Shown here in pieces: positions 4,837 through 20,328 of a stretch of DNA of 38,695 bases. Both the position numbers and the translations under genes were made by a program. Under the pieces are notes generated by a model. It made no database searches and was not told the origin of the DNA. It worked only from the letters and a program-made list of their open reading frames with translations. The stretch is taken from assembly GCF_001194135.2 (NCBI RefSeq), contig NC_069001.1, positions 37,144,060 through 37,182,754 of the forward strand, read 5' to 3'. Positions within the stretch are counted from its first letter, which is position 1, and every line of letters begins with the position of its first letter. Origin of the DNA: Octopus bimaculoides (lineage: Eukaryota).

Positions 4837-6756
4837 TCAGTGAATATGTTTGTGCTTCTTTAAGATACCACTTCCAGAAAACGATTTACCACAGATATCA
4901 CAGTGATATGGTTTCTCTCCTGTATGAGTATGTTTGTGATAAGATAAGCCATGTTTTTGAGAAAATGATTTACCACAAATATCACAGTGATACGGCTTCT
5001 CACCAGTGTGAATACGTTTGTGAGCAATTAAGGCACCACTTTGAGAAAATGATTTATCACAGACATCACAGTGATACGGTTTCTCTCCTGTATGAATGTT
5101 TATGTGCCTCGTTAAATAATTATTTCTTGGGAATGATTCACCACAGATTCCACACTGATAGGGTTTCTCTCCTGTATGAATACGTTTGTGAATAGTTAAA
5201 TCACTGCTTTGAGAGAATGATTTATCACAGACGTCACAATGATATGGCTTCTCCCCTGTATGAATACGTTTGTGGCTTCTTAAGTGACTTTTTTGAGAGA
5301 AAGATTTCCCACAGATATCACAGTGATATGGTTTCTCTCCTGTATGAATACGTTTGTGATCAGTCAAGGAAGTATTTCTAGAGAATGATTTACCACAGAT
5401 ATCACAGTGATATGGCTTCTCTCCTGCATGAGTGCGTTTGTGCTTAGTTAAGTCACAATTTTGAAAGTATGATTTACCACAAATATCACAGGGATAAGGT
5501 TTCTTTCCTGGATGGATGCTTTTGTGAGAAGTTAAGTCACCACTCTGAGAGAAGGATTTGCCACAGATATCACAGCAATATGGCTTCTCCCCGGTATGGA
5601 TTCGTATGTGTATAGTCAATTTACCATTGGAAGAGAATGATTTACCACAGATATGACAGTGAAATAGTTTCTCTCCTGTATGAATTAATTTGTGTGTAGT
5701 TAATTTAGCATTCGAAGAGAATGATTTACCACAGACATCACATGAATATGGCTTCTCACCTGTATGAATACTTTTATGTAAAGTTAAGTGGATTCTTTGA
5801 GAGAATGATTTACCACAAATATCACAGTGATATGGCCTCTCACCTGTATGAACGCATTTGTGTTTTGTTAAGATACTACCATTAGAGAATGATTTGCCAC
5901 AGATATCACAGCAATATGGCTTCTCCCCAGTATGCGTACGGTTGTGAATAGCCAAGTAACTGTTTGCAGAAAATGATTTACCACAAATATCACAGTGATA
6001 TGGTTTCTCCACAATGTGAATGCGTTTGTGTCTAGACAACTCACTACTTTGGGAGAATGGTTTACCACAGGTATCATGAAGATATGATTTTTGACTTGTG
6101 TGAACAAGTTTGTGTTTAGTCAAGTGACATGTTTGAGAGAATGAATCCCCACAGATATCACAGAGATACGGCCTCTCACCAGTATGAACACGCTTATGTT
6201 TAGATAAGTTACCAGTTATCGAGAAATATTTTCCACATATATCACACCGATATGGTTTCTCTCCTGTATGAATACGTTTGTGTTTTGTTAACACACTATT
6301 TTCAGAGAATGATTTACCACAGATGTCACAGTGATAAGGTTTCTCTCCTGTATGAATGCGTTTGTGTCTGGACAAATGACATTTTTGAGAGAATGCGTCA
6401 CCACAGATATTACAGTGATATGGTTTCTCTCCTGTATGAATACGTTTGTGAGTAGTTAAATTACCAATCTGGGAGAATGATTTGCTACAAATATCACAAT
6501 GGTATGGTTTCTCTCCTGTATGTATACATTTATGCTGACTTAAGGGAGTACATTCAGAAAATGATTTCCCACAGATATCACAATGATACGGTTTCTCTTC
6601 AGTATGAATGCATTTGTGAGTGATTAGACTATCTTTTTGATTAAAAGATATTTGACAGATATTACATCGATACAATGTTTTATCTGTCTCTTTCAACATC
6701 TCATCAGAAAAATCAATATATTTCAGATCTTTTGCAACTGTCACCTCACAACTCAT
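4837..6756 (-). CDS. C2H2 zinc-finger protein ZNF-A, 639 aa, 22 tandem fingers (finger 8 lacks its first Cys), short acidic N-terminus, no KRAB/SCAN/BTB
   Basis: Uninterrupted ORF of CxxC-x12-HxxxH repeats with TGEKPY linkers. Confidence 0.95.
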
Positions 6757-7125: not shown

Positions 7126-7145
7126 CTGAAATAAAAAAGAAACAG
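7126..7145 (-). promoter_or_regulatory. 3' splice acceptor opening the large ZNF-A exon
   Basis: Minus strand ctgtttcttttttatttcAG|aaatatcagatgac. An equivalent acceptor context precedes ZNF-D at 32682-32700. Confidence 0.6.
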
Positions 7146-8572
7146 TATAAGATACTTGTCTGTGTATATAGTACATTCTACATATTTTGTGCATAGATTG
7201 GCCTAAGTATATGTGTATATAGCCTACATATTTAGTGTGTGTATATAGTTATCTACATACTTTCTCTGCATAACAGTCCAAGTATTTAGTTTATGAATAG
7301 TTATCAACATACTTTGTGTATATAGTGGTCCATGTACGAGTTTTATATTATCTACATGTTTAGTTTATGGATATAAACTGTTACACACATGGAGAACTTA
7401 GCAGATACAAAATAAATAAAAAGGTCCAGCTATAGATATTACAATAATCAGGTTAGCTATCAGGTATATTCAAGGTTAGAGACATTGTTTCTAAAGGTGA
7501 TCAACAAAGAGAGCATCTCCTCAGAAAACCAATTTTATTAAAGAAGGATGTGATGACACTGATATTTTTGGGGGGGGAGTTCAACTTTCAACATTTGAAA
7601 ATTCTAAGAGAAAGATTCCTGTTCATAGTTTTATTGATATCGTAAGCTATTTGAAGAGAAAACAAAAAGGGAAGCCCGCTGATGGGCAGTTACCAAATAT
7701 TAGAGATTTGTAAAAAAAATTGGTAATTGTTACTAATAATTCCTGCAAAATCTGTTCTAGCTAAAGTAACAAAAACAAAGATCTATCCTTCATCAAGAAT
7801 AACATAATTAAATAATAGACTATATACACGTATAAAGATTATTAGGATACTTCAAATAAGCATGTAATTGTTTATATTTGTTAAATCGCTGAATTCAGAC
7901 CAGTGAGAATAAAATTAATATAGACGCGAGACTAGCAACATTAAAAGGATTTCAATTACCAAACACTGTAATTTACTTTCGATTTGTAACAGTTAATCCT
8001 GGATTTTCAAAAATAAAACGTAAAAATTTCGGTTTGGAAGTATGATCTTGTAGAGAGAAATCAGAAATACGAGAAATATCTCCTTCCCCGCCCCCTGATG
8101 TAATGATTTTTAACTTTGTAACCTTTCCAGCCTTTAATCAACAATTCATAATCTCAGAATAAAGCGACGAAGCTGATGTCATATCTTAAGCCGCACTTTC
8201 GATACAACACGTTTGTGCAAATTGGAATCTCGCACATTACTCCTTGTTTGTTTATATGTGTGTATATTTTGTATATATGATAGATAGATACATAGATTTA
8301 ATATACATTTGCTATAGTCAAGGAGAACGACTCCAATAACAAAATGCTTCATTAACACTAAAATAAATATTACGTATTATTGTTTTCACAAAGAACAAGT
8401 TCAACGGAGATGGAAAACAAAAGATAACTGCATTTGTAGAGAACGTTGAAAACAGTGGGCAGGTAGAAAGAACGAAAGAACCATGAAACATTGTTAGTAT
8501 TTATAGCAACACGATGAAAGGCAAACATTTCTGAAAGTTTACATTATGTTGTGTGCACGTGTGTGTGTATGT

Positions 8573-9354
8573 GTGTAACTTTTTTAGGCCAGGTTCAAAG
8601 AACCCTATTTCTTATCCTGAAAAAAAAAAAAAAAAAATCTGAAGTCTTCAATTGACTCTGTTTCTGAATGGGATCTACCTCTTATAAAATGTTCTAATAA
8701 TCGGAACGATGGAAATCTGTAGGTGCTGAGACGAGTGAGTACGGAGGATGTAGAAGAACTTACCATCCTAACTGTCTTTCCCTTCCTTGGGTTTGCTGCA
8801 GACGATGAAACATTGTGTTCGGTTCTCAAGCATGAGATCATGTGGAACCCAAATTCCTTCTTTGCATGTTTTGCCAATTTGCTTGAGATGTTCGTGGACA
8901 GTTGAACGTGACACATTAAATTTTTGCGCCAAATTTCTGGTGCTTTGACGCGGATCCGATTCGATAGTCTCATTCAAAAATTCGTCATTCAGAGCGGATG
9001 GTCTTCCAGAGCGAGGCTTGTCGGATATGTCATAATCACCATCTTTAAACCTTTTAAACCACAGTCGACATGTACGAGCTTTCACTGCATCCGGATACAC
9101 TTCACAAATGTTTTTCATCGCTTCTATAGTGGTACTGTTCTTTCGAAACTCATACAGTAAGCAATGACGAATATGTTGTTTGAGAAATTTCTTATCATCC
9201 ATGGGATTAATTACTGAAATAGCTATGATAGAAGAGACGATATACCATTTCTAGGCATTTCCCTCCCATTCGACCTTAACTGTGTCGTGATTGGTTGATA
9301 CATACTTCATAGTGGTCAAAAAAACAAAAACAATTACTTTCTGAACACCCTCGT
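8573..9354 (-). mobile_element. Internally deleted mariner transposon (HTH region intact, catalytic core missing)
   Basis: ORF 8768-9202 has HIRHCLLYEF, WFKRFKDGD, PRSGRP and WVPHDL. It is joined directly to a decayed C-terminal GW*VLLHPPYSLVSAPTDFH..FFEPGLKKL. A mariner-type end (acgagggtgttcagaaagt, reverse complement) lies at about 9336-9354; the other TIR was not found. Confidence 0.9.
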
Positions 9355-9366
9355 GTATGTGTATAC

Positions 9367-9690
9367 GCACAGGCGTGACTGTGTAGTAGAAAGCTTGCTT
9401 CCTAACCACGTGTTTTAAGGTTCATCCCCACTGCATGGCATCTTGGGCCTACCAAAGCCCTGTGAGTGTACTTAGTAGATGGAAACTGAAAGCAGCCTGT
9501 CGTATATGCATGTAGCTGTGTCTTTGCATTTGGGTATGTCCCCACCACCACTTGACAATGGGTGTTGGTGTCTTTACGTCCCTGTAACTTAGTGGTTCAC
9601 CAAAAGAGACAGATAGAATAAAGTACCAGGCTTTAAAAACATAAGCACTGCAATTGAATCAAATGACTGAAACAAATAAAGGTAAAAGAT
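9367..9690 (+). mobile_element. SINE family C, diverged copy
   Basis: Collinear with 2982-3350 (head, ggaaactgaaag, cgtccctgtaacttag, gatagaataaagtaccaggc, aaatgactgaaac). Confidence 0.7.
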
Positions 9691-9718
9691 ATATATATAT
9701 ATACAATATATATATATA

Positions 9719-9880: not shown

Positions 9881-10652
9881 AGGACCCTTGTAGGCCAATC
9901 CTCCTCACCTTAACACTTCTGCTGTATAGGACAAGTCTTCTTGAGTACAGGAAGGTGCCAGGTATCTCAGTATATATACAAGATAGCAGCATACGGTTGC
10001 GTGCACAGTGAGAGCTACAATGACCTTCATGAGGCAATGTGCCAAATGACACAATTGGGTTTACTTTGCATGTTGTGAACTTTGTGTTTTTGTGATCACA
10101 TGTATGCTGTAGACTGTGATTTTTGTCATGGACATGGTCAGTGCATAGATATACAGTAAGATTTAAATATAAATATGTATATAAAAAGTGAAAATATACA
10201 TATACATATAAAAAGGTACAATGTGTGAATAAGAAATATATATAAATATAAAAAAGTAAAAAAATATGCAATTGAAAAATATAAAGATTTAAATATAAAT
10301 TATATATAAATGGAAAGATATACATATATATATATATATACATATAAGAAAAAAAGATACATGCATATTTTCAGATATTTTGTTGGATGGCCGTTGACTG
10401 TTGAGGAGTTCTTAATTTGACAAGTTTTTATGTCTTCCCTTTTTCAACAACAGCCTGACATATTGGTGAACAGTCAACAGTGTTGGAGAGCATAAGGATA
10501 AGGAGTTGTAGCTGAGATGTAGGACTAGAAACCATCTGAATATTGGAAAAGAGTTACCTATATCATGATTTGCACTGGATATCAAAATGCCAACACCACG
10601 ACTGTTGCTCAATGTCCTGTGAATGCTGTAAGACAGGACAGAGACAGCTACA

Positions 10653-10902
10653 ATCATCATCATCATCATCGTTTAACGTCCGCTTTCCATGCTAGCATGG
10701 GTTGGATGATTTGACTGAAGACTGGTGAACCGGATGGCTGCACCAGGCTCCAATCTGATTTGGCAGAGTTTCTACAGCTGGATGCCCTTCCTAACACCAG
10801 CCACTCTGAGAGTGTAGTGGGTGCTTTTACGTGCCACCGGCACGAGGGCCAGTCACACGGTACTGGCAATGGCCACGCTCAAAATGGTGTTTTTTACGTG
10901 CC
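10653..10902 (-). mobile_element. Young RTE LINE 3' end running into an assembly gap
   Basis: (CAT)n-cgtttaacgtccgctttccatgctagcatgggttgga is nearly identical to 3632-3860. Confidence 0.8.
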
Positions 10903-11584
10903 NNNNNNNNNNNNNNNNNNNNNNNNNNNNNNNNNNNNNNNNNNNNNNNNNNNNNNNNNNNNNNNNNNNNNNNNNNNNNNNNNNNNNNNNNNNNNNNNNN
11001 NNNNNNNNNNNNNNNNNNNNNNNNNNNNNNNNNNNNNNNNNNNNNNNNNNNNNNNNNNNNNNNNNNNNNNNNNNNNNNNNNNNNNNNNNNNNNNNNNNNN
11101 NNNNNNNNNNNNNNNNNNNNNNNNNNNNNNNNNNNNNNNNNNNNNNNNNNNNNNNNNNNNNNNNNNNNNNNNNNNNNNNNNNNNNNNNNNNNNNNNNNNN
11201 NNNNNNNNNNNNNNNNNNNNNNNNNNNNNNNNNNNNNNNNNNNNNNNNNNNNNNNNNNNNNNNNNNNNNNNNNNNNNNNNNNNNNNNNNNNNNNNNNNNN
11301 NNNNNNNNNNNNNNNNNNNNNNNNNNNNNNNNNNNNNNNNNNNNNNNNNNNNNNNNNNNNNNNNNNNNNNNNNNNNNNNNNNNNNNNNNNNNNNNNNNNN
11401 NNNNNNNNNNNNNNNNNNNNNNNNNNNNNNNNNNNNNNNNNNNNNNNNNNNNNNNNNNNNNNNNNNNNNNNNNNNNNNNNNNNNNNNNNNNNNNNNNNNN
11501 NNNNNNNNNNNNNNNNNNNNNNNNNNNNNNNNNNNNNNNNNNNNNNNNNNNNNNNNNNNNNNNNNNNNNNNNNNNNNNNNNNNN
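10903..11584. other. Assembly gap (further gaps: 14495-14538, 15831-16324, 16849-16948, 29100-29122, 31210-31651, 33027-33350)
   Basis: Runs of N. Confidence 1.
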
Positions 11585-11664
11585 GCTTTACATCTGCCAA
11601 GTTCTTTTGTGAAAAATTAAATTAAAAAACAAAAAGAAAAGCAATACATTTTACTCGAGAAAAT

Positions 11665-12555
11665 TCAAAAACAAAAGCTTGAAATACACTCGAGGAGTTT
11701 CTCAAACAAATTACAATTCTCATATCTCTTGCGCCACATAAACTCGCAGAGATACAAGTCAATGGTAGAACTTTTGGTTCCACAGCGTTGTTTTCTCCCT
11801 CGTTTTAAAGGGATTCTTGTGTTTTCCACTAGTTTCATATGGGTACTACCTTCTGAGTTAACAAACTCCACACTGTGGTTCACTGTTCTATAACGCAACG
11901 CATAATCATCAATTTTAAGAATGGGAGAATAGGATTCCCAAATGTCACTGAAAATTGTGGTTCCTGGAAGAATTGACTGACGTATGCATTCCTCTAGTGT
12001 GTCGCGATTCAGACATGATGCCGCATAAAGGAAAACATCCTTGGTCTCGCGACACACTCCTCCGAATACCCACTGCTCAGGTAGCAAACTTCTTCGGTTA
12101 CATTTACCTCTTGAGAAGACTATTTTGTCTAAGTCAACAGTCTTCCCAGGACCACCTATCTGAACTGGGTGGCGAAGCAAGTCCTCTGCACATATTTCAC
12201 GAACATAGCTGTTGTAATCAACAATTGTGCTGTGCTTCATCCCCAGTTCTTCAACACAAAAATGGACTGAAGTCAATTCCTTGGACCATGAGTAAAGGAA
12301 AAGCACTACAGTCCTAAGAGGAAGAGTCCTTCCTTCCAACCATGTACCTCTTCTGACAGAAATACACACACAGCATCCTTTTTGGGAGCATCGCCAATAA
12401 ACCTTCCCATGAACCATCTTTTTCCTCATATAGTGTTTGTTTGCACATAATTTCCTTTTAGGGATAATACCCTTTTCTTGTAAATAAGAAACCACATCCT
12501 CCTCAGTTTTCAATTTCTCCATCAGACTTGAAAGGTTAGAGTTGGCTGTGGCCAT
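11665..12555 (-). CDS. Merlin/IS1595 (ISXO2-like) DDE transposase-derived ORF, 296 aa from the probable ATG at 12555 (323 aa from the upstream start in the ORF track)
   Basis: N-terminal C..H / WRC....C zinc-ribbon-like motif; IGGPGKTVDLD, QWVFGG, TTIFSDIWESY, TVNHS..FV, H..LVEN and YLCEFMWRKRY match Merlin transposase motifs. No stops or frameshifts. Confidence 0.88.
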   Translation of the reverse strand: MATANSNLSSLMEKLKTEEDVVSYLQEKGIIPKRKLCANKHYMRKKMVHGKVYWRCSQKGCCVCISVRRGTWLEGRTLPLRTVVLFLYSWSKELTSVHFCVEELGMKHSTIVDYNSYVREICAEDLLRHPVQIGGPGKTVDLDKIVFSRGKCNRRSLLPEQWVFGGVCRETKDVFLYAASCLNRDTLEECIRQSILPGTTIFSDIWESYSPILKIDDYALRYRTVNHSVEFVNSEGSTHMKLVENTRIPLKRGRKQRCGTKSSTIDLYLCEFMWRKRYENCNLFEKLLECISSFCF

Positions 12556-13668
12556 ACTTCTATTTAGTTTGAAAAGATCCAGGAAAACACACAGTTCAAA
12601 ATTATGAAAATGAGGTAGTGACAGGACAGCAACCAATAATGAGTTTCACAAAAAAAAAACGCAGAGGTGAAAATAATGGTCAGAAAATAGGAACTCGTCA
12701 AAGAAAACAGACAAGTGTGGTAGTAGTTTTAAGCAGAATACAGCTCGAAACAATAGAAAACTGTGACAGCAACAGAAAAGATTCTATATTCTTTTACTAT
12801 GTGTCTTTTATCCTCTGAAAACGATGTTTATGCCAACATAATCTGATTTTCTGAAAGAGAGAAAAAATGGAAGATATAAAGAGTAGGCAAGAGAAATTGA
12901 ACAGCAGAAATTTCATAGCAATAAATAACAATGAATACACACCAGGCCCAGGCCATCAGTAATTACTCAGGGTAGGCAGTTGGCTCCCTTTATATAGTAA
13001 AACACGAAAAAATAAGTGAAACACAGGCGCATGATTTACTTCTGCTTTTATAGCACGTATAGAAAATGGTGTTGTAGGAATGCACACAGCACATGTATTA
13101 CATCAGTACTATGTCTAGCTTAAATACTGAGATTGAAAAGCTGGGGTGAATTATGCCTACCTAATCTACAAAAAAAATTAAACACTTTGCATTTTGTGCA
13201 TAGTAATCAGAGTAACCTTCATAATTTTATGGAATTAGATGCATATTTTGCCATAAAAGGAAAATGTTGCTATCAATTTATTTTATTCAGGTGGCACATC
13301 CCTGCCACATACTAAGCCAACTGAATGACATTAGAAATAAGTTCACAGAAGCTATATCACTGACACTTTCACATGGAGATCTTTTGGGAAAAGTCTGTCT
13401 TAAATTTTTTCCCCAGCTGAATTACTTATGTTTATGTGTGTATGTATGCATACTTGCGTATGTATGTGTTTATGCACATGGGCATAGAACACATACAAAA
13501 AAAACAACAACAAAAATCAGAGGGGTCGCTTTCGTCAGACTCGCCTTTTTTTAATGTTATGATTTTAAAATAAAGACATTTCAAATTGTTCGGGATGTTA
13601 AAAAAGTAAATAAAAATCAAGAGGAAGATAGTGAAGAGACAAAAGTCAACATGAATACTGGACGGTCT

Positions 13669-13846
13669 TTCATTCTGTTGCTTCAGCCATTTGACCGCAG
13701 TCGAGCAAATGGACCCCAGGACTTATTCTTTGTAAGCCTAGTACTTATTCTATCGTTTACTTTCGCAGAACCGCTAAGTTAAGGGCATGTAAACACACCA
13801 GCATCGGTTGTCAAGCGATGTGCGGGGGGGGGGGGAACAAACACAG
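13669..13846 (-). mobile_element. SINE family C, 3' half
   Basis: ggacttattctttgtaagcctagtacttattctatcg..ggttgtcaagcgatg is the reverse complement of the family C tail. Confidence 0.7.
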
Positions 13847-14148
13847 TTGACAAGACAAAACGTGTTCACGAAAATTACCGAGTTCTTTTGTTGACAAAAT
13901 TCGAGTCATATCGAAATTATGCCAAATTACCAAAGAAACTGGTGCCGCTGCAGAATTTTATTAAAAAATATGCAATATAAAGAAACAGCTGGGTATCTAT
14001 AACTTGGCTACTATCTTTAGCAGATCAAACATCCACATAGAGCAGCCAAAGCCCAAATCATGCCACTCAAAAGCAGCGTTGAATTATTTCGAAATATTAA
14101 CCGCAACATCACCAAGGAAGTAAATTGTAATTCAAAGGGAAAATTAGG

Positions 14149-14318
14149 GTACTACTTAAATGCAGAGGTCCCGACGTATCGACATAAAGGGTAGGTGATC
14201 TAGTTTGGTAGATTTTTGTACGCTGTGTGGACGTTTAATGACACCCTAACCCTAACGAGAGTGTACTGTAAAAACATCGTTACGAAGATGCACCGGGACC
14301 TCTGTATTTGGTAGTGCC
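14149..14318. mobile_element. Merlin-type MITE (170 bp) with a perfect 8-bp TSD
   Basis: Left end GGTACTACttaaatgcagaggtccc; right end (reverse complement) GGCACTACcaaatacagaggtccc. AAAATTAG occurs at 14141-14148 and 14319-14326. Internal ccctaaccctaa. Confidence 0.8.
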
Positions 14319-15239
14319 AAAATTAGTTACTATTTGATGCAGGGACTCGTTATTTAGACCCAGATTAGCCGTGATTCAACAGATCTATAACAAGTAGGTT
14401 GTTCTATCTATTGATTTTCGAGGAAAAGACGGATGAATTAAAATAAAATAACATTCTTTAAAAAATACCTCATATAATAATAACTATAGTAGCTNNNNNN
14501 NNNNNNNNNNNNNNNNNNNNNNNNNNNNNNNNNNNNNNACTGAAACTAATAGTTTCTTGAAAAACGTATTAGATAAATACTTTCCTTCGTGGTTCACTAA
14601 GGTATAACTGGTACGGGGGGGCGGGGGCGATGTTGGATGTTCATTGGTTAGTTTTGGTCATGTGGCAAGATGTCTAGCAACGTTCAAGAAACACGACGTA
14701 TTTTCAAAATGGGAAATATATAAAAATAAATGAGAGTTCAGTGAAGTACCGAATAGAAAAGCAATGGTCGTTTATTTTATAAAGAAAAAACGAAAACATT
14801 TAGGTAACTTAAAATTTTTGCTCATTCGAATGAATGAACAGAAATTTAGAAAATGTGCGATTTATTTGCTGTCGCTTCGTTTCACATTGTCACAAATACT
14901 TCCCTGCCTAGCAACCGCGTGTTTATAAACGATTACTTCGTTGATCCACATGAAATACAAACAAAGAATATTAAATTTACATCTTTTCCGCATTGCTATT
15001 AACTTTTACACCATTTTCTCGTATAGTCCTTTTGTGTGTGTGGTTTCTAAATACTTCTAAGCTGCCAAAATCCTTTAGGGCCATAATTGGACGGACGTGA
15101 TGACAGTGATGTCTGATAACCTGATGGGAAGAATTAATGTAACGTAGCTAATGCATAGAACGTACTTATACAAGCTTATTTTATACTAGCAGTTATACCT
15201 TATGTTGCTCGGGATTAAAATGGCACAGGTTGTTTTTTG

Positions 15240-15440
15240 TTTTTTTTTCGGACAAGTGACTGCGGTCATGTTGGAGCCACCACCTTTAGTCGAAGAAATC
15301 GATCTCTTGATTTATTCTTTGTAAGCCTAGTACTTATTCTATCGGTGAGTTTTGCCAAAAGTGTAAGTTACGGGCATGCAAATACAGCAACAGCGGTTGT
15401 CAAGCGATGGTGGGGGTACCAACACAGACACACATAAACA
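15240..15440 (-). mobile_element. SINE family C, 3' half
   Basis: ttattctttgtaagcctagtacttattctatcgg..ggttgtcaagcgatggtggggg. Confidence 0.7.
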
Positions 15441-15489
15441 CTGGCTGACTGGCCAGATTGCTAACTTGCCCGAAGACAAGTGGACTCCT

Positions 15490-16417: not shown

Positions 16418-16644
16418 AAAAATTTCATAGTGTATATTATTTCACTGTTGTGGATGTAATTTCAGTTTTATAAAACAGTGTTGAGAGGTCCTCATTACCA
16501 TGTTTAATCATATTTCCTGTAAGGATATATTTACAGTTATATGAAGTAGTTTTTATATGGATCGACTTGAAATTGATGGTTGCTTTTCTGTATGAATAAA
16601 CACATGAACAATTGCTTCTTTGAAAGGTGTACTTGTCACAGATA

Positions 16645-16848
<204 letters not shown>

Positions 16849-17101
16849 NNNNNNNNNNNNNNNNNNNNNNNNNNNNNNNNNNNNNNNNNNNNNNNNNNNN
16901 NNNNNNNNNNNNNNNNNNNNNNNNNNNNNNNNNNNNNNNNNNNNNNNNTAGTGGTTTCCACGGCGTCGACTAATTACGAATTTATACACGTACGAAAAGT
17001 ATTGACTTTCTTGACTTTCATTCATATATACGTGTGTGTGTGTCTATACATGCACGTGTGTGCGTATCCCTGTCGATTTACAAAGGAATACGATGGGTTC
17101 T

Positions 17102-20129: not shown

Positions 20130-20328
20130 GGTACTACTAAAGCAGCGCGGACCCGAACGCGCAGCCGCGCTAGCTAGTCTTGAGTGGTCGATCCTAACCC
20201 TAACCCTATCCCTAAACCGCGTGTGCAAATGAATACGTGTTTAGGGTTAGGGTTAGGATCGACCACTGACGACTAGCTAGCGCGGACGCGCGACTGCGCG
20301 TTCGGGTCCGCGCTGCTTTAGTAGTACC
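20130..20328. mobile_element. Merlin-type palindromic MITE (199 bp) with telomeric repeats in both arms
   Basis: Perfect 35-bp terminal IR GGTACTACTAAAGCAGCGCGGACCCGAACGCGCAG, extending imperfectly to about 90 bp. TSD tttctctc (20122-29) / tttctttc (20329-36). CCCTAA and TTAGGG tracts inside. Confidence 0.85.

What the first reader, a model, noticed from the sequence alone, without database searches (positions are those of the whole stretch)
11665..12600. Intact, TIR-less Merlin transposase ORF behind a splice acceptor: candidate domesticated gene inside the ZNF cluster
Seen: 296 codons with no stop or frameshift. The three putative catalytic residues appear retained (VDLD, SDIW, LVEN), but usually conserved neighbours are altered (IDES to LDKI, KYNRGR to KCNRRS, HTQ to HMK, IESxW to VENTR). 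The ATG at 12555 is preceded by a pyrimidine-rich tract and TAG|AAGT (AG at 12561-12560, NAGNAG-like), the same layout as the neighbouring ZNF genes, whose ORFs sit in one large exon after an acceptor. No GG-type TIR is visible in the about 1.5 kb upstream or the 80 bp before the gap. A GC box (14617-14627), an inverted CCAAT and ctagcaac motifs lie about 2 kb upstream. Established: Merlin is the eukaryotic relative of IS1595, and I know of few described domestications. Inference: a host gene under purifying selection, or an immobilised but still catalytic source of transposase.
Basis: partly seen in the sequence, partly recalled or inferred. Interest (0 to 1): 0.76.

Follow-up and report, generated by a model that had tools for sequence, protein, structure and literature searches.

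The report
Octopus gene candidate from Merlin transposon
An old, immobile copy of a Merlin "jumping gene" in the octopus genome has kept its 296-codon reading frame intact at the same chromosomal site in three Octopus species and is transcribed as a spliced two-exon message, so it is a plausible but only weakly constrained case of a transposon enzyme adopted as a host gene.

Summary
The 296-codon ORF (11665-12555, minus strand) is real and encodes a Merlin/IS1595-type DDE transposase. The window is Octopus bimaculoides.

Evidence for a host gene:
- An equally long, intact orthologue sits at the syntenic site in O. sinensis, and O. vulgaris has an annotated 296-aa protein of the same 90% cluster.
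- RNA contigs show a conserved two-exon mRNA.
- A 49-nt CCAAT-containing block upstream of exon 1 is identical between species. The GC box is not conserved.
- No significant TIR is found.
- The ORF has no indel (about 6 expected, P~0.002) and no stop (P~0.085).

Evidence that tempers it:
- Whole-gene dN/dS is 0.65, not significantly below 1. Only the catalytic core is constrained (0.31-0.44, p~0.02-0.03).
- Residues invariant elsewhere in the family are replaced next to the catalytic residues.
- The ORF belongs to an old family of roughly 50-100 copies at 80-85% identity, many internally deleted.
- At 95% identity or more it is single-copy apart from one processed retrocopy.

Verdict: a candidate young domesticated Merlin gene (confidence about 0.6). 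The main rival is a lucky neutral relic inside a host exon. It is a new member of a known kind and moderately interesting.

The parts
11665..12555 (-). Coding sequence of 296 codons plus stop for a Merlin/IS1595-type DDE transposase-derived protein.
   Evidence: ORF listing and sequence. Pfam PF12762 scores 32 bits against a cut-off of 27. There are 167 homologues, the best being O. sinensis LOC115222964 at 88% identity and the same length.
12172..12447 (-). N-terminal DNA-binding module, residues 37-128. It has a C37/H41/C56/C61 zinc-finger-like beta unit followed by three helices (HTH-like). This is the fastest-evolving part.
   Evidence: C37, C56 and C61 are conserved across the family. H41 is read from the alignment and is not among the 55 conserved columns. 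The AlphaFold model gives strands 42-66 and helices 80-128 with pLDDT around 90. Omega for residues 1-111 is 1.19. The 12341-12448 stretch is near single copy even at 80% likeness.
11824..12129 (-). Catalytic core spanning the retained D-D-E triad: D143 (12127-12129), D204 (11944-11946), E244 (11824-11826). Spacing is D-60-D-39-E.
   Evidence: Family alignment and conserved-column table. Codon coordinates. In the model D143 lies in strand 139-147, D204 follows strand 200-203 and E244 lies in helix 242-258. Omega is 0.31 for residues 112-232.
11585..12850 (-). Exon 2 of the mRNA. It has a 295-nt 5' UTR, then the whole ORF, then at least 80 nt of 3' UTR running into the assembly gap.
   Evidence: RNA contigs in X1 (1451 nt) and X2 cover 11636/11585-12850 without interruption. 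In-frame stops lie upstream of the ATG, and there are two short uORFs.
12851..14468 (-). Intron of 1,618 nt with GT..AG ends on the minus strand. It contains highly expressed SINE-like repeats.
   Evidence: The joint 12850->14469 with ends CT..AC on the + strand appears in two RNA runs from different studies. Donor TATATGAG|GTATTTTT and acceptor TCTCTTTCAG|AAAA are identical in O. sinensis. The same junction is seen in transcripts of organisms B and C.
14469..14617 (-). Exon 1, non-coding, minimum extent. It spans assembly gap 14495-14538, whose true sequence is longer.
   Evidence: The X1 contig continues 14469-14494, then 131 unplaced nt, then 14539-14617. An X28 DNA contig places 249 nt between 14484 and 14630.
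14630..14678 (-). Candidate core promoter block. It is 49 nt long and 100% identical between O. bimaculoides and O. sinensis, and contains CCAAT (14643-14647) and GTTGCTAG.
   Evidence: Alignment. Coordinates, and P about 0.015 for 49 identical bases at the flank divergence. The neighbouring GC box 14617-14627 is not conserved.
11585..12783 (-). Extent of homology to the dispersed Merlin family, that is, the element remnant. Its 5' boundary is near 12783. Its 3' boundary is hidden by gap 10903-11584.
   Evidence: Summed DNA-contig depth at 80% likeness reaches 50-100 times single copy over the ORF. It is 18-35 times at 12588-12615 and 12742-12783, and single copy from 12784 to the acceptor. 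Loose ends with unrelated flanks sit at 12782-12784.
12101..12113 (-). Internal splice-donor-like site caagag|gtaaatg (exon|intron at 12108|12107), after codon 149. It corresponds to the junction used in an annotated O. vulgaris isoform. Its use is not seen in O. bimaculoides RNA.
   Evidence: O. vulgaris P0121 consists of residues 1-150 plus a C2H2-like tail. The tail exon lies at L001 12842-12943. Site coordinates. No such joint was seen.

Best explanation
This is a fossil copy of a Merlin (IS1595-like) DNA transposon. It inserted before O. bimaculoides split from the O. sinensis/vulgaris lineage. It has lost recognisable terminal inverted repeats.

The remnant now lies wholly inside the second exon of a two-exon transcript. 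That transcript starts from host DNA about 2 kb upstream, near a conserved CCAAT-containing block, and is spliced through a conserved GT..AG intron into a single-copy host acceptor at 12851/12850.

The 296-codon ORF has been kept open at the orthologous site in O. sinensis as well, and O. vulgaris has an annotated 296-aa protein of the same cluster. Constraint is detectable only on the RNase-H-like core. The most likely reading is a young, weakly constrained domesticated transposase gene.

Shown: orthology, the intact ORF, the spliced and conserved transcript, family membership, copy number, and germline expression (a processed retrocopy exists).

Inferred: the protein is made, enters the nucleus, and binds DNA through its zinc-finger/HTH N-terminus. 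It may recognise the roughly 50-100 decayed relatives of its own family. The RNase-H-like core would serve as a folding, oligomerisation or DNA-holding module rather than as an efficient transposase, because family-invariant residues beside the catalytic ones have been replaced.
For: Orthology. A colinear chain of about 12 kb links the window to the O. sinensis locus, with the same downstream HTH_48 ORF and ZNF gene. The ORF has the same length and is intact in O. sinensis. O. vulgaris P0122 is a 296-aa member of the same 90% cluster, but its locus was not examined.

ORF maintenance. The aligned flanks show 20 indel events in 2,935 bp, so 6.1 are expected in 891 bp. None is seen (P=0.0023). 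After 63 random substitutions, 8.5% of simulated ORFs stay stop-free. Jointly this is about 2e-4 per copy.

Selection. The core (residues 112-296) has omega 0.44 (p=0.029), and residues 112-232 have omega 0.31 (p=0.02).

Host-type expression. The GT..AG joint 12850->14469 appears in two RNA runs. Both splice sites are identical in O. sinensis, and the same junction is used in organisms B and C. The acceptor lies in single-copy DNA outside the element remnant. A 49-nt upstream block is identical between species.

Immobility. No significant TIR was found. No paralogous contig closer than about 80-84% was seen, apart from one copy at about 95%.

Germline expression. The exon1-exon2 junction is present in genomic DNA contigs of X25, X27 and X28, which come from three studies. 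It was confirmed reciprocally from the exon 1 side in X28 only.

Protein integrity. The AlphaFold model has pLDDT 77.8 with the strand and helix order of an RNase-H-like core. Foldseek matches only DDE transposase and integrase cores.
Against: - Whole-gene omega is 0.65 and is not significantly below 1 (p=0.13). Codon-position differences of 23/15/25 are close to uniform.
- The ORF's nucleotide divergence equals that of the flanks (p=0.29).
- The N-terminal third evolves at omega about 1.2.
- Recent omega is higher than the clade's long-term 0.20-0.38.
- The indel expectation comes from AT-rich, low-complexity flanks and may be too high by about a factor of two.
- The ORF is one of roughly 50-100 family copies, and the genome has 191 annotated Merlin-like proteins (PMC8101967).
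- The main ATG follows about 400 nt of leader with two short uORFs. No evidence of translation was available.
- No orthologue more distant than O. sinensis/vulgaris appeared among the listed protein hits.
- Model confidence is low around E244, residues 226-265.
Confidence: 0.6

Rival explanations
1. Neutral relic in a host exon. The element landed in, or was captured by, the last exon of a pre-existing non-coding or ZNF-associated transcript. Transcription and splicing are conserved for reasons unrelated to the ORF. The ORF has stayed open in both lineages by chance and is slowly decaying.
For: - Whole-gene omega is 0.65, not significant. The ORF's substitution rate equals that of the flanks, and codon positions are nearly uniform.
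- Family-invariant residues are replaced, including the lineage-specific E144K.
- There were many family copies from which a lucky one could be drawn.
- In the O. sinensis gene calls, an upstream 475-aa gene has a CDS ending at L001 9733, which is 23 nt into this same exon. The exon therefore also serves as a terminal, mostly UTR exon for another gene model.
- The long leader has uORFs.
Against: - The joint probability of no indel and no stop since the species split is about 2e-4 per copy, or about 4e-3 if the indel rate is halved. More than about 100 intact copies at the time of the split would be needed for chance to be comfortable.
- Constraint on the core is nominally significant, whereas a neutral relic should show omega about 1 everywhere.
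- No other protein within 65-88% identity exists in the database, so this is the only intact survivor of its subfamily.
Confidence: 0.27
2. Immobilised but catalytically active transposase source. The copy cannot move itself but supplies enzyme in trans to mobilise deletion derivatives and MITEs of its family.
For: - The D-D-E triad is retained in all three species.
- The core is the most constrained part.
- The family contains many internally deleted, non-autonomous-looking copies.
- The gene is expressed in the germline, as the retrocopy shows.
Against: - The paralogous genomic contigs seen are 16-20% diverged. At 95% or more only one extra copy exists, and it carries the splice junction, so it is a retrocopy rather than a transposition product. 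There is therefore no sign of mobilisation since before the species split.
- An immobile copy gains nothing from mobilising others, so element-level selection cannot maintain it.
- Family-invariant E144 (to K, in O. bimaculoides only), G155 (to R) and W247 (to R or G, differing between species) are replaced beside the catalytic residues.
Confidence: 0.08
3. Host-transposase fusion precursor. The functional product is not the full transposase. It is an isoform in which the N-terminal DNA-binding module (residues 1-150) is spliced from the internal donor at 12108|12107 to a downstream C2H2 finger exon.
For: - The O. vulgaris annotation contains such a 183-aa protein, P0121.
- Its tail exon exists 1.95 kb downstream of the stop in O. 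sinensis.
- The donor-like site caagag|gtaaatg is present in the window.
Against: - No joint from 12108 was seen in O. bimaculoides RNA contigs or raw reads.
- The tail exon has no specific match in the window. The corresponding region is the assembly gap.
- The tail is a single degenerate finger followed by a stop.
- This isoform would not explain why the 3' two-thirds of the ORF stays open and is the most constrained part.
Confidence: 0.05

Closest known systems
Merlin superfamily DNA transposons (eukaryotic relatives of bacterial IS1595/IS1016; Feschotte 2004, as summarised in PMC8101967)
   Same: - The protein has the DDE_Tnp_IS1595 domain, a typical length of about 300 aa and the D-D-E triad at the aligned positions.
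- It belongs to a dispersed family with internally deleted copies.
- O. bimaculoides is already noted as Merlin-rich, with 191 proteins.
   Different: - No TIR beginning with GG and no target-site duplication can be found.
- The copy is fixed at an orthologous site in at least two species.
- It is transcribed from an upstream host exon through an intron.
- It departs from the family consensus at 9 of 55 highly conserved columns, against a mean of 2.3 in other members.
Candidate Merlin domestications proposed in protists (Stentor, Symbiodinium, Bodo/Perkinsela; PMC8101967)
   Same: The argument has the same form: preserved ORFs without TIRs or TSDs, in part syntenic between species.
   Different: Here the case is in an animal. 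It adds a conserved spliced host transcript, a quantitative test of ORF maintenance, and an explicit copy-number estimate. Those protist cases were not tested for selection in the passages read.
Host-transposase fusion genes formed by transposase capture in vertebrates (Cosby et al., bioRxiv 10.1101/2020.05.07.082677), and the frog KRAB + IS1595-domain proteins P0062/P0064 found here
   Same: - A transposase ORF is brought under host splicing and promoter control.
- Catalytic-site erosion occurs. In the frog proteins the third catalytic position reads K in P0062.
   Different: - In the window gene the upstream exon is non-coding, so no host protein domain is fused.
- The whole transposase is retained, not only the DNA-binding domain.
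- The survey's main text does not mention Merlin.
C. elegans MAB-31, a nuclear factor of the Sma/Mab TGF-beta pathway (PMC2921377)
   Same: NCBI names the stomatopod homologues of this ORF (48% identical, 16-member cluster) 'mab-31-like'. This suggests MAB-31 may itself be Merlin-derived.
   Different: The link is not verified here. The 2010 paper states that MAB-31 resembles no protein outside nematodes.

Membership tests
Merlin / IS1595 transposase (protein family) | DDE_Tnp_IS1595 domain (Pfam PF12762) above the curated threshold | tested here: met
   32 bits against a gathering cut-off of 27, residues 161-275. The bacterial NCBIfam model NF033547 covers residues 77-277 but scores 47 bits, below its cut-off of 75.
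Merlin / IS1595 transposase (protein family) | D-D-E catalytic triad at the aligned positions on an RNase-H-like fold | tested here: met
   D143, D204 and E244 align with the family columns. The model has the expected strand and helix order, but pLDDT is below 50 for residues 226-265 around E244. Foldseek hits are only DDE transposase and integrase cores, with E of 1e-3 or weaker.
Merlin transposable element (mobile unit) | Terminal inverted repeats beginning 5'-GG | tested here: not met
   No credible pair brackets the ORF in the gap-free O. sinensis locus. The best candidate, with one arm at the mapped 5' boundary, scores 26 against 21.9 +/- 2.6 for shuffles, and 8.7% of shuffles reach that score. 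The 3' end in the window is hidden by gap 10903-11584.
Merlin transposable element (mobile unit) | 8-9 bp target-site duplication | not testable with these tools
   The element ends are not defined at base resolution. A family consensus from the whole genome would be needed.
Merlin transposable element (mobile unit) | Multiple related copies, including deletion derivatives | tested here: met
   About 50-100 times single-copy depth at 80% likeness. The paralogous contigs are 80-84% identical, with joints skipping 87-815 nt.
Active autonomous element | Near-identical copies elsewhere in the genome | tested here: not met
   At 95% or more, most of the ORF is at single-copy depth. One variant contig type (5 differences in 110 nt) points to a single extra copy, and a DNA contig carries the exon-exon junction, so that copy is probably a retrocopy.
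Domesticated (exapted) transposase gene | Orthologous, syntenic position in species separated by substantial neutral divergence | tested here: met
   A colinear chain of about 12 kb links the window to the O. sinensis locus, with flank identity 91.8%. Only this one species split was sampled, O. bimaculoides against O. sinensis/vulgaris. The O. vulgaris locus itself was not examined.
Domesticated (exapted) transposase gene | ORF intact in all orthologues beyond chance | tested here: met
   296 codons in O. bimaculoides, O. sinensis and the O. vulgaris annotation. P(no indel)=0.0023 and P(no stop)=0.085. The indel expectation may be inflated by low-complexity flanks.
Domesticated (exapted) transposase gene | dN/dS significantly below 1 | tested here: inconclusive
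   Whole gene 0.65 (p=0.13). Core residues 112-296 give 0.44 (p=0.029), residues 112-232 give 0.31 (p=0.02), and the N-terminal third gives 1.19. This is a single pairwise comparison.
Domesticated (exapted) transposase gene | Transcription under host control (host promoter or exon, conserved splicing) | tested here: met
   A GT..AG intron joins a non-element exon 1 to a single-copy acceptor. The junction appears in two O. bimaculoides RNA runs and in organisms B and C, and the splice sites are identical in O. sinensis.
Domesticated (exapted) transposase gene | Protein product and organismal function | not testable with these tools
   No proteomic, ribosome-profiling or genetic data were available.
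Host-transposase fusion gene | In-frame splice joining a host protein domain to a transposase domain | tested here: inconclusive
   Exon 1 is non-coding, with in-frame stops. An annotated O. vulgaris isoform joins residues 1-150 to a C2H2-like tail. No such joint is seen in O. bimaculoides RNA.

The most novel reading that the evidence does not exclude
The octopus-type Merlin clade comprises the window gene, O. sinensis LOC115225419 (P0003), LOC115225578 (P0123) and the unplaced P0006 lineage, with 100% NJ bootstrap support. Under this reading it is a set of repeatedly domesticated transposase genes. The window gene would be the one member that keeps a working D-D-E nuclease under host transcriptional control, serving as a host-used DNA-cutting or DNA-joining enzyme in cephalopods. 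A fast-evolving zinc-finger recognition loop would retarget it between species.
Probability: 0.08. Interest if true: 0.85.

Novelty: new member of a known kind. Interest (0 to 1): 0.5.

Why it matters
Domesticated DDE transposases such as RAG1, SETMAR, the PGBD genes and THAP9 relatives are a classic route to new genes. In the passages read here, Merlin-derived candidates were proposed only in protists (PMC8101967).

If this gene is real, it would be a documented animal case caught early. The transposase is still complete, the triad is intact, and host promoter, intron and splice sites are already in place. Yet constraint is weak and invariant catalytic-site neighbours have begun to change.

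It also sits in the expanded C2H2 zinc-finger cluster typical of octopus genomes. The neighbouring ZNF gene likewise uses a transposon-derived (mariner HTH) first exon. The locus therefore illustrates how transposon pieces are being wired into cephalopod gene structures.

If it proves to be a neutral relic, it is a useful caution. An intact, spliced, syntenic transposase ORF is not sufficient evidence of domestication over about 8% neutral divergence.

Tried and rejected
- TIR search by inverted repeats in the gap-free O. sinensis locus gave only low-complexity pairs and a separate MITE-like insert at L001 10992-11692.
- A candidate TIR with one arm at the mapped 5' boundary was not significant.
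- Comparing the paralogue loci L003 and L004 to recover element ends failed. Homology stops at the ORF boundaries, at 75% and 69% nt identity.
- The splice acceptor at 12559 was rejected. Transcripts are contiguous there.
- No splicing from the upstream ZNF gene into exon 2 was seen in O. bimaculoides.
- No splicing from the Merlin exon into the downstream ZNF gene, and no use of the internal donor at 12108, was seen.
- A sequence search of the PDB found nothing meaningful. The fold search gave only weak generic DDE cores.
- The first tree script timed out and the second crashed while drawing the tree. A hand-written NJ script was used instead.
- A single ancient domestication followed by gene duplication was rejected for the window gene. 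The 80-85% identical dispersed copies with internal deletions are closer to it than paralogue P0003 is (75% nt). Its lineage was therefore still transposing after those paralogues split off.
- The link to C. elegans mab-31 could not be verified.
Full report
**What is there.** The window is from Octopus bimaculoides, assembly GCA_001194135.2, chromosome record CM046621.1. On the minus strand an ORF runs from ATG 12555 to TGA 11665-11667. It has 296 codons with no stop or frameshift. It matches Pfam DDE_Tnp_IS1595 above the gathering threshold (32 against 27 bits). It matches the bacterial NCBIfam IS1595 model over residues 77-277, but below that model's cut-off. A database search returned 167 homologues. 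Most are about 290-300 aa and carry PF12762, from many animals. C2H2 zinc-finger ORFs surround it.

**Motifs and fold.** I aligned 37 family members (A1).
- The catalytic triad is present at the family positions: D143 (VDLD), D204 (SDIW) and E244 (LVEN), with spacing D-60-D-39-E.
- Among 55 columns that are at least 87% conserved in 31 non-octopus members, the window protein deviates at 9. The changes are E144K, G155R, R156S, V179A, R182L, H222Y, T240M, W247R and S267L.
- Other members deviate at a mean of 2.3 columns, with a maximum of 6. Those columns were defined from the same members, which biases their counts low.
- E144K is specific to O. bimaculoides. O. sinensis, O. vulgaris and all others keep E, so this change arose after the copy was fixed.
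- W247 is R in O. bimaculoides and G in the sister species.
- An AlphaFold model built on the alignment has mean pLDDT 77.8 and pTM 0.74. It shows a confident N-terminal beta unit plus three helices, followed by the strand and helix order of an RNase-H-like core. Confidence is low for residues 153-158 and 226-265, the latter around E244.
- Foldseek against the PDB returns only DDE transposase and retroviral integrase cores, with E of 1e-3 or weaker. There is no close solved relative.

**Orthology.** The best hit, O. sinensis LOC115222964 (P0002), is 88% identical and also 296 aa. O. vulgaris has a 296-aa member of the same 90% cluster. Its genomic locus was not examined. Once ZNF-repeat noise is set aside, the O. 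sinensis locus (L001) aligns colinearly with the window over about 12 kb at 89-92% identity. It has the same downstream neighbours: an HTH_48 ORF and then a long ZNF gene. The insertion therefore predates the split of these lineages.

**Selection.**
- The two ORFs differ at 63 of 891 nt, distributed 23/15/25 by codon position, and at 37 residues.
- Nine aligned non-coding blocks (2,935 bp) are 91.8% identical against 92.9% for the ORF, which is not different (p=0.29). They contain 20 indel events. That predicts 6.1 indels in the ORF, where there are none (P=0.0023).
- After 63 random substitutions with the observed transition bias, 8.5% of simulated ORFs remain stop-free.
- A pairwise codon-model likelihood-ratio test gives omega 0.65 for the whole gene (p=0.13).
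- By region, omega is 1.19 for residues 1-111, 0.44 for residues 112-296 (p=0.029) and 0.31 for residues 112-232 (p=0.02).
- Between the octopus paralogues, long-term omega is 0.20-0.38, all highly significant. Recent constraint is therefore relaxed relative to the clade's history.

In sum, the reading frame has been protected. Amino-acid constraint is modest and confined to the core.

**Transcript.** RNA contigs from two independent studies of the same organism (X1, X2) cover 11636/11585-12850 without interruption. They then join 12850 to 14469, skipping 1,618 nt whose ends are CT..AC on the + strand. That is a GT..AG intron on the gene strand.
- The acceptor is tctctttcag|aaaatc at 12851/12850.
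- Exon 1 runs from 14469 to at least 14617, across an assembly gap that the transcript fills with 131 nt.
- Exon 1 is non-coding. In-frame stops precede the ATG, and two short uORFs (15 and 3 codons) lie in the roughly 400-nt leader.
- The donor and acceptor sequences are identical in O. sinensis.
- Transcript contigs from two other organisms (B and C) are collinear with the ORF. They break at 12852 into a sequence that is the reverse complement of the O. sinensis exon 1 end. The same junction is therefore used there.
- Upstream of exon 1, a 49-nt block (14630-14678) containing CCAAT and GTTGCTAG is 100% identical between species (P about 0.015).
- No junction links this exon to the upstream or downstream ZNF genes in O. 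bimaculoides RNA.
- The O. sinensis gene calls include an upstream 475-aa gene whose CDS ends 23 nt into the orthologous exon.

**Copy number and element boundaries.** I laid whole-genome contigs of three DNA runs on the region at 80% likeness.
- Single-copy depth is about 20, 64 and 20 in the three runs. Summed depth over the core reaches 1,356, 7,397 and 2,018 respectively, which is roughly 50-100 related copies.
- Depth is near single copy over the zinc-finger loop region 12341-12448.
- The longest paralogous contigs are 80-84% identical, and many carry internal deletions of 87-815 nt. This is the signature of an old DNA-transposon family with non-autonomous derivatives.
- Upstream of the ATG the multi-copy signal persists to about 12634 and again at 12742-12783. 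It is single copy from 12784 to the acceptor. Loose ends with unrelated flanks sit at 12782-12784.
- The element remnant therefore lies entirely inside exon 2, and the acceptor is host DNA.
- These dispersed copies are closer to the window ORF than paralogue P0003 is (75% nt). The window's lineage was thus still transposing after the annotated paralogues diverged. A single ancient domestication followed by duplication does not fit.
- At 95% likeness or more, most of the ORF is at single-copy depth. One variant contig type (5 differences in 110 nt) occurs at equal depth in all three runs, which indicates one extra copy.

**Retrocopy.** DNA-run contigs covering 12753-12852 continue into the exon 1 end rather than the intron. 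This is seen in X25, X27 and X28, which come from three studies. Reciprocally, an X28 DNA contig aligned to exon 1 carries the start of exon 2 just before 14469. The intron-containing form is also present in DNA. The genome therefore holds a processed, intron-less copy. That explains the extra copy at about 95% identity and shows that the spliced mRNA was expressed in the germline.

**TIRs.** No credible inverted pair brackets the ORF in the gap-free O. sinensis locus. A candidate with one arm exactly at the mapped 5' boundary is no better than shuffled controls. The paralogue loci share no flanking homology. The 3' end in the window is hidden by the 682-N gap. In O. sinensis a separate MITE-like inverted repeat starts about 100 bp after the stop.

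**Family context.** The window protein, its two orthologues, O. sinensis P0003 and P0123, and P0006 from an unnamed run form a clade with 100% NJ bootstrap support on a long stem. The clade is sister to canonical-looking Merlins such as the multi-copy stomatopod 'mab-31-like' proteins. P0123 has lost conserved positions around the third catalytic residue, while an E still aligns at the E244 column. P0006 has H at both Asp positions and lacks the E-bearing region, yet both keep ORFs. The Merlin survey PMC8101967 lists O. bimaculoides as unusually rich in Merlin proteins (191) and proposes possible domestications only in protists. The vertebrate transposase-capture preprint does not mention Merlin in its main text. 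The mab-31 paper reports no homologues outside nematodes, so NCBI's label is only a lead.

**Interpretation.** The best-supported reading, at about 0.6, is a young and weakly constrained domesticated Merlin transposase gene. The copy is immobile and orthologous, is driven and spliced by host sequences, and has its frame preserved. Its core is under some constraint, and its catalytic neighbourhood is beginning to erode.

I infer, without direct evidence, that the product is a nuclear DNA-binding protein. Its zinc-finger/HTH module may still recognise remnants of its own family. Efficient transposition is unlikely.

The main rival, at about 0.27, is a neutral relic that happens to lie in a conserved host exon and has stayed open by luck. 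The near-neutral whole-gene omega and the many family copies argue for this. The joint probability of about 2e-4 per copy and the core constraint argue against it.

A trans-acting active transposase source (about 0.08) is disfavoured by the absence of any young copies and by the lineage-specific loss of invariant residues. A fusion isoform with a C2H2 tail (about 0.05) is suggested only by an O. vulgaris annotation.

**Verdict.** The specific splice acceptor is wrong. This is a new member of a known kind, of moderate interest.

Noticed in passing
window 12753-12852 joined to 14469-14563 in genomic DNA contigs; the locus of the copy is unknown: A processed, intron-less retrocopy of this gene exists in the O. 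bimaculoides genome. DNA-run contigs in X25, X27 and X28 (three studies) carry the exact exon1-exon2 junction. A second ORF contig type at about 95% identity (11943-12052, 5 differences) is probably the same copy.
   Followed up: partly
window 7126-9718, minus strand (ORF 8768-9202; intron 7126-8763): The neighbouring 639-aa C2H2 ZNF gene (ORF 4837-6756) has its own 5' exon (8764 to about 9718) and a GT..AG intron. That first exon contains a 144-aa mariner-type HTH_48 ORF, which is also called at the syntenic place in O. sinensis. A second transposon-derived piece is thus wired into a host gene in the same cluster.
   Followed up: partly
L001 12842-12943 (O. sinensis); window donor-like site 12108|12107: The O. 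vulgaris annotation has a 183-aa isoform (CAI9738361.1, P0121). It joins the first 150 residues of the Merlin protein to a degenerate C2H2-finger tail encoded 1.95 kb downstream. The corresponding region of the window lies in the assembly gap.
   Followed up: partly
window 13595-13862, 15203-15470, 10627-10900 and 16622-16915: Short repeats with extreme RNA contig depth (1e4-1e5) and hundreds of genomic copies. They look like SINEs, and they sit in the intron and between genes.
   Followed up: no
L001 10992-11692: A MITE-like element with 95-nt inverted arms (83% complementary, 511 nt apart) lies about 100 bp after the stop codon in O. sinensis. It is probably what fills gap 10903-11584 in the window.
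   Followed up: no
window 14484-14630 and 11839: Two apparent assembly issues. A DNA contig places 249 nt between 14484 and 14630, where the reference has 145 including 44 N. Reference base A at 11839 reads G in all three DNA runs and in the X1 RNA.
   Followed up: no
window 20130-20137 (+) and 20321-20328 (-); also 11842, 14148, 32146: GGTACTAC occurs 5 times where 0.62 are expected (0 of 100 shuffles reach 5). One copy lies inside the ORF itself.
   Followed up: no
proteins P0062 and P0064 (frogs Mixophyes fleayi and Pseudophryne corroboree): These are KRAB (PF01352) + IS1595-domain fusion proteins of 473-481 aa. P0062 has K in place of the third catalytic E. They look like Merlin-derived host-transposase fusions in amphibians.
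   Followed up: no
proteins P0123 (O. sinensis LOC115225578, locus L004) and P0006 (Logan run SRR11869384, locus L005): These clade members keep open reading frames but have degraded catalytic regions. P0006 has H at both Asp positions and lacks the E-bearing region. P0123 keeps D, D and an aligned E but has lost most conserved positions around the E. P0123 also has two RefSeq isoforms that differ by an internal 10-aa segment.
   Followed up: partly
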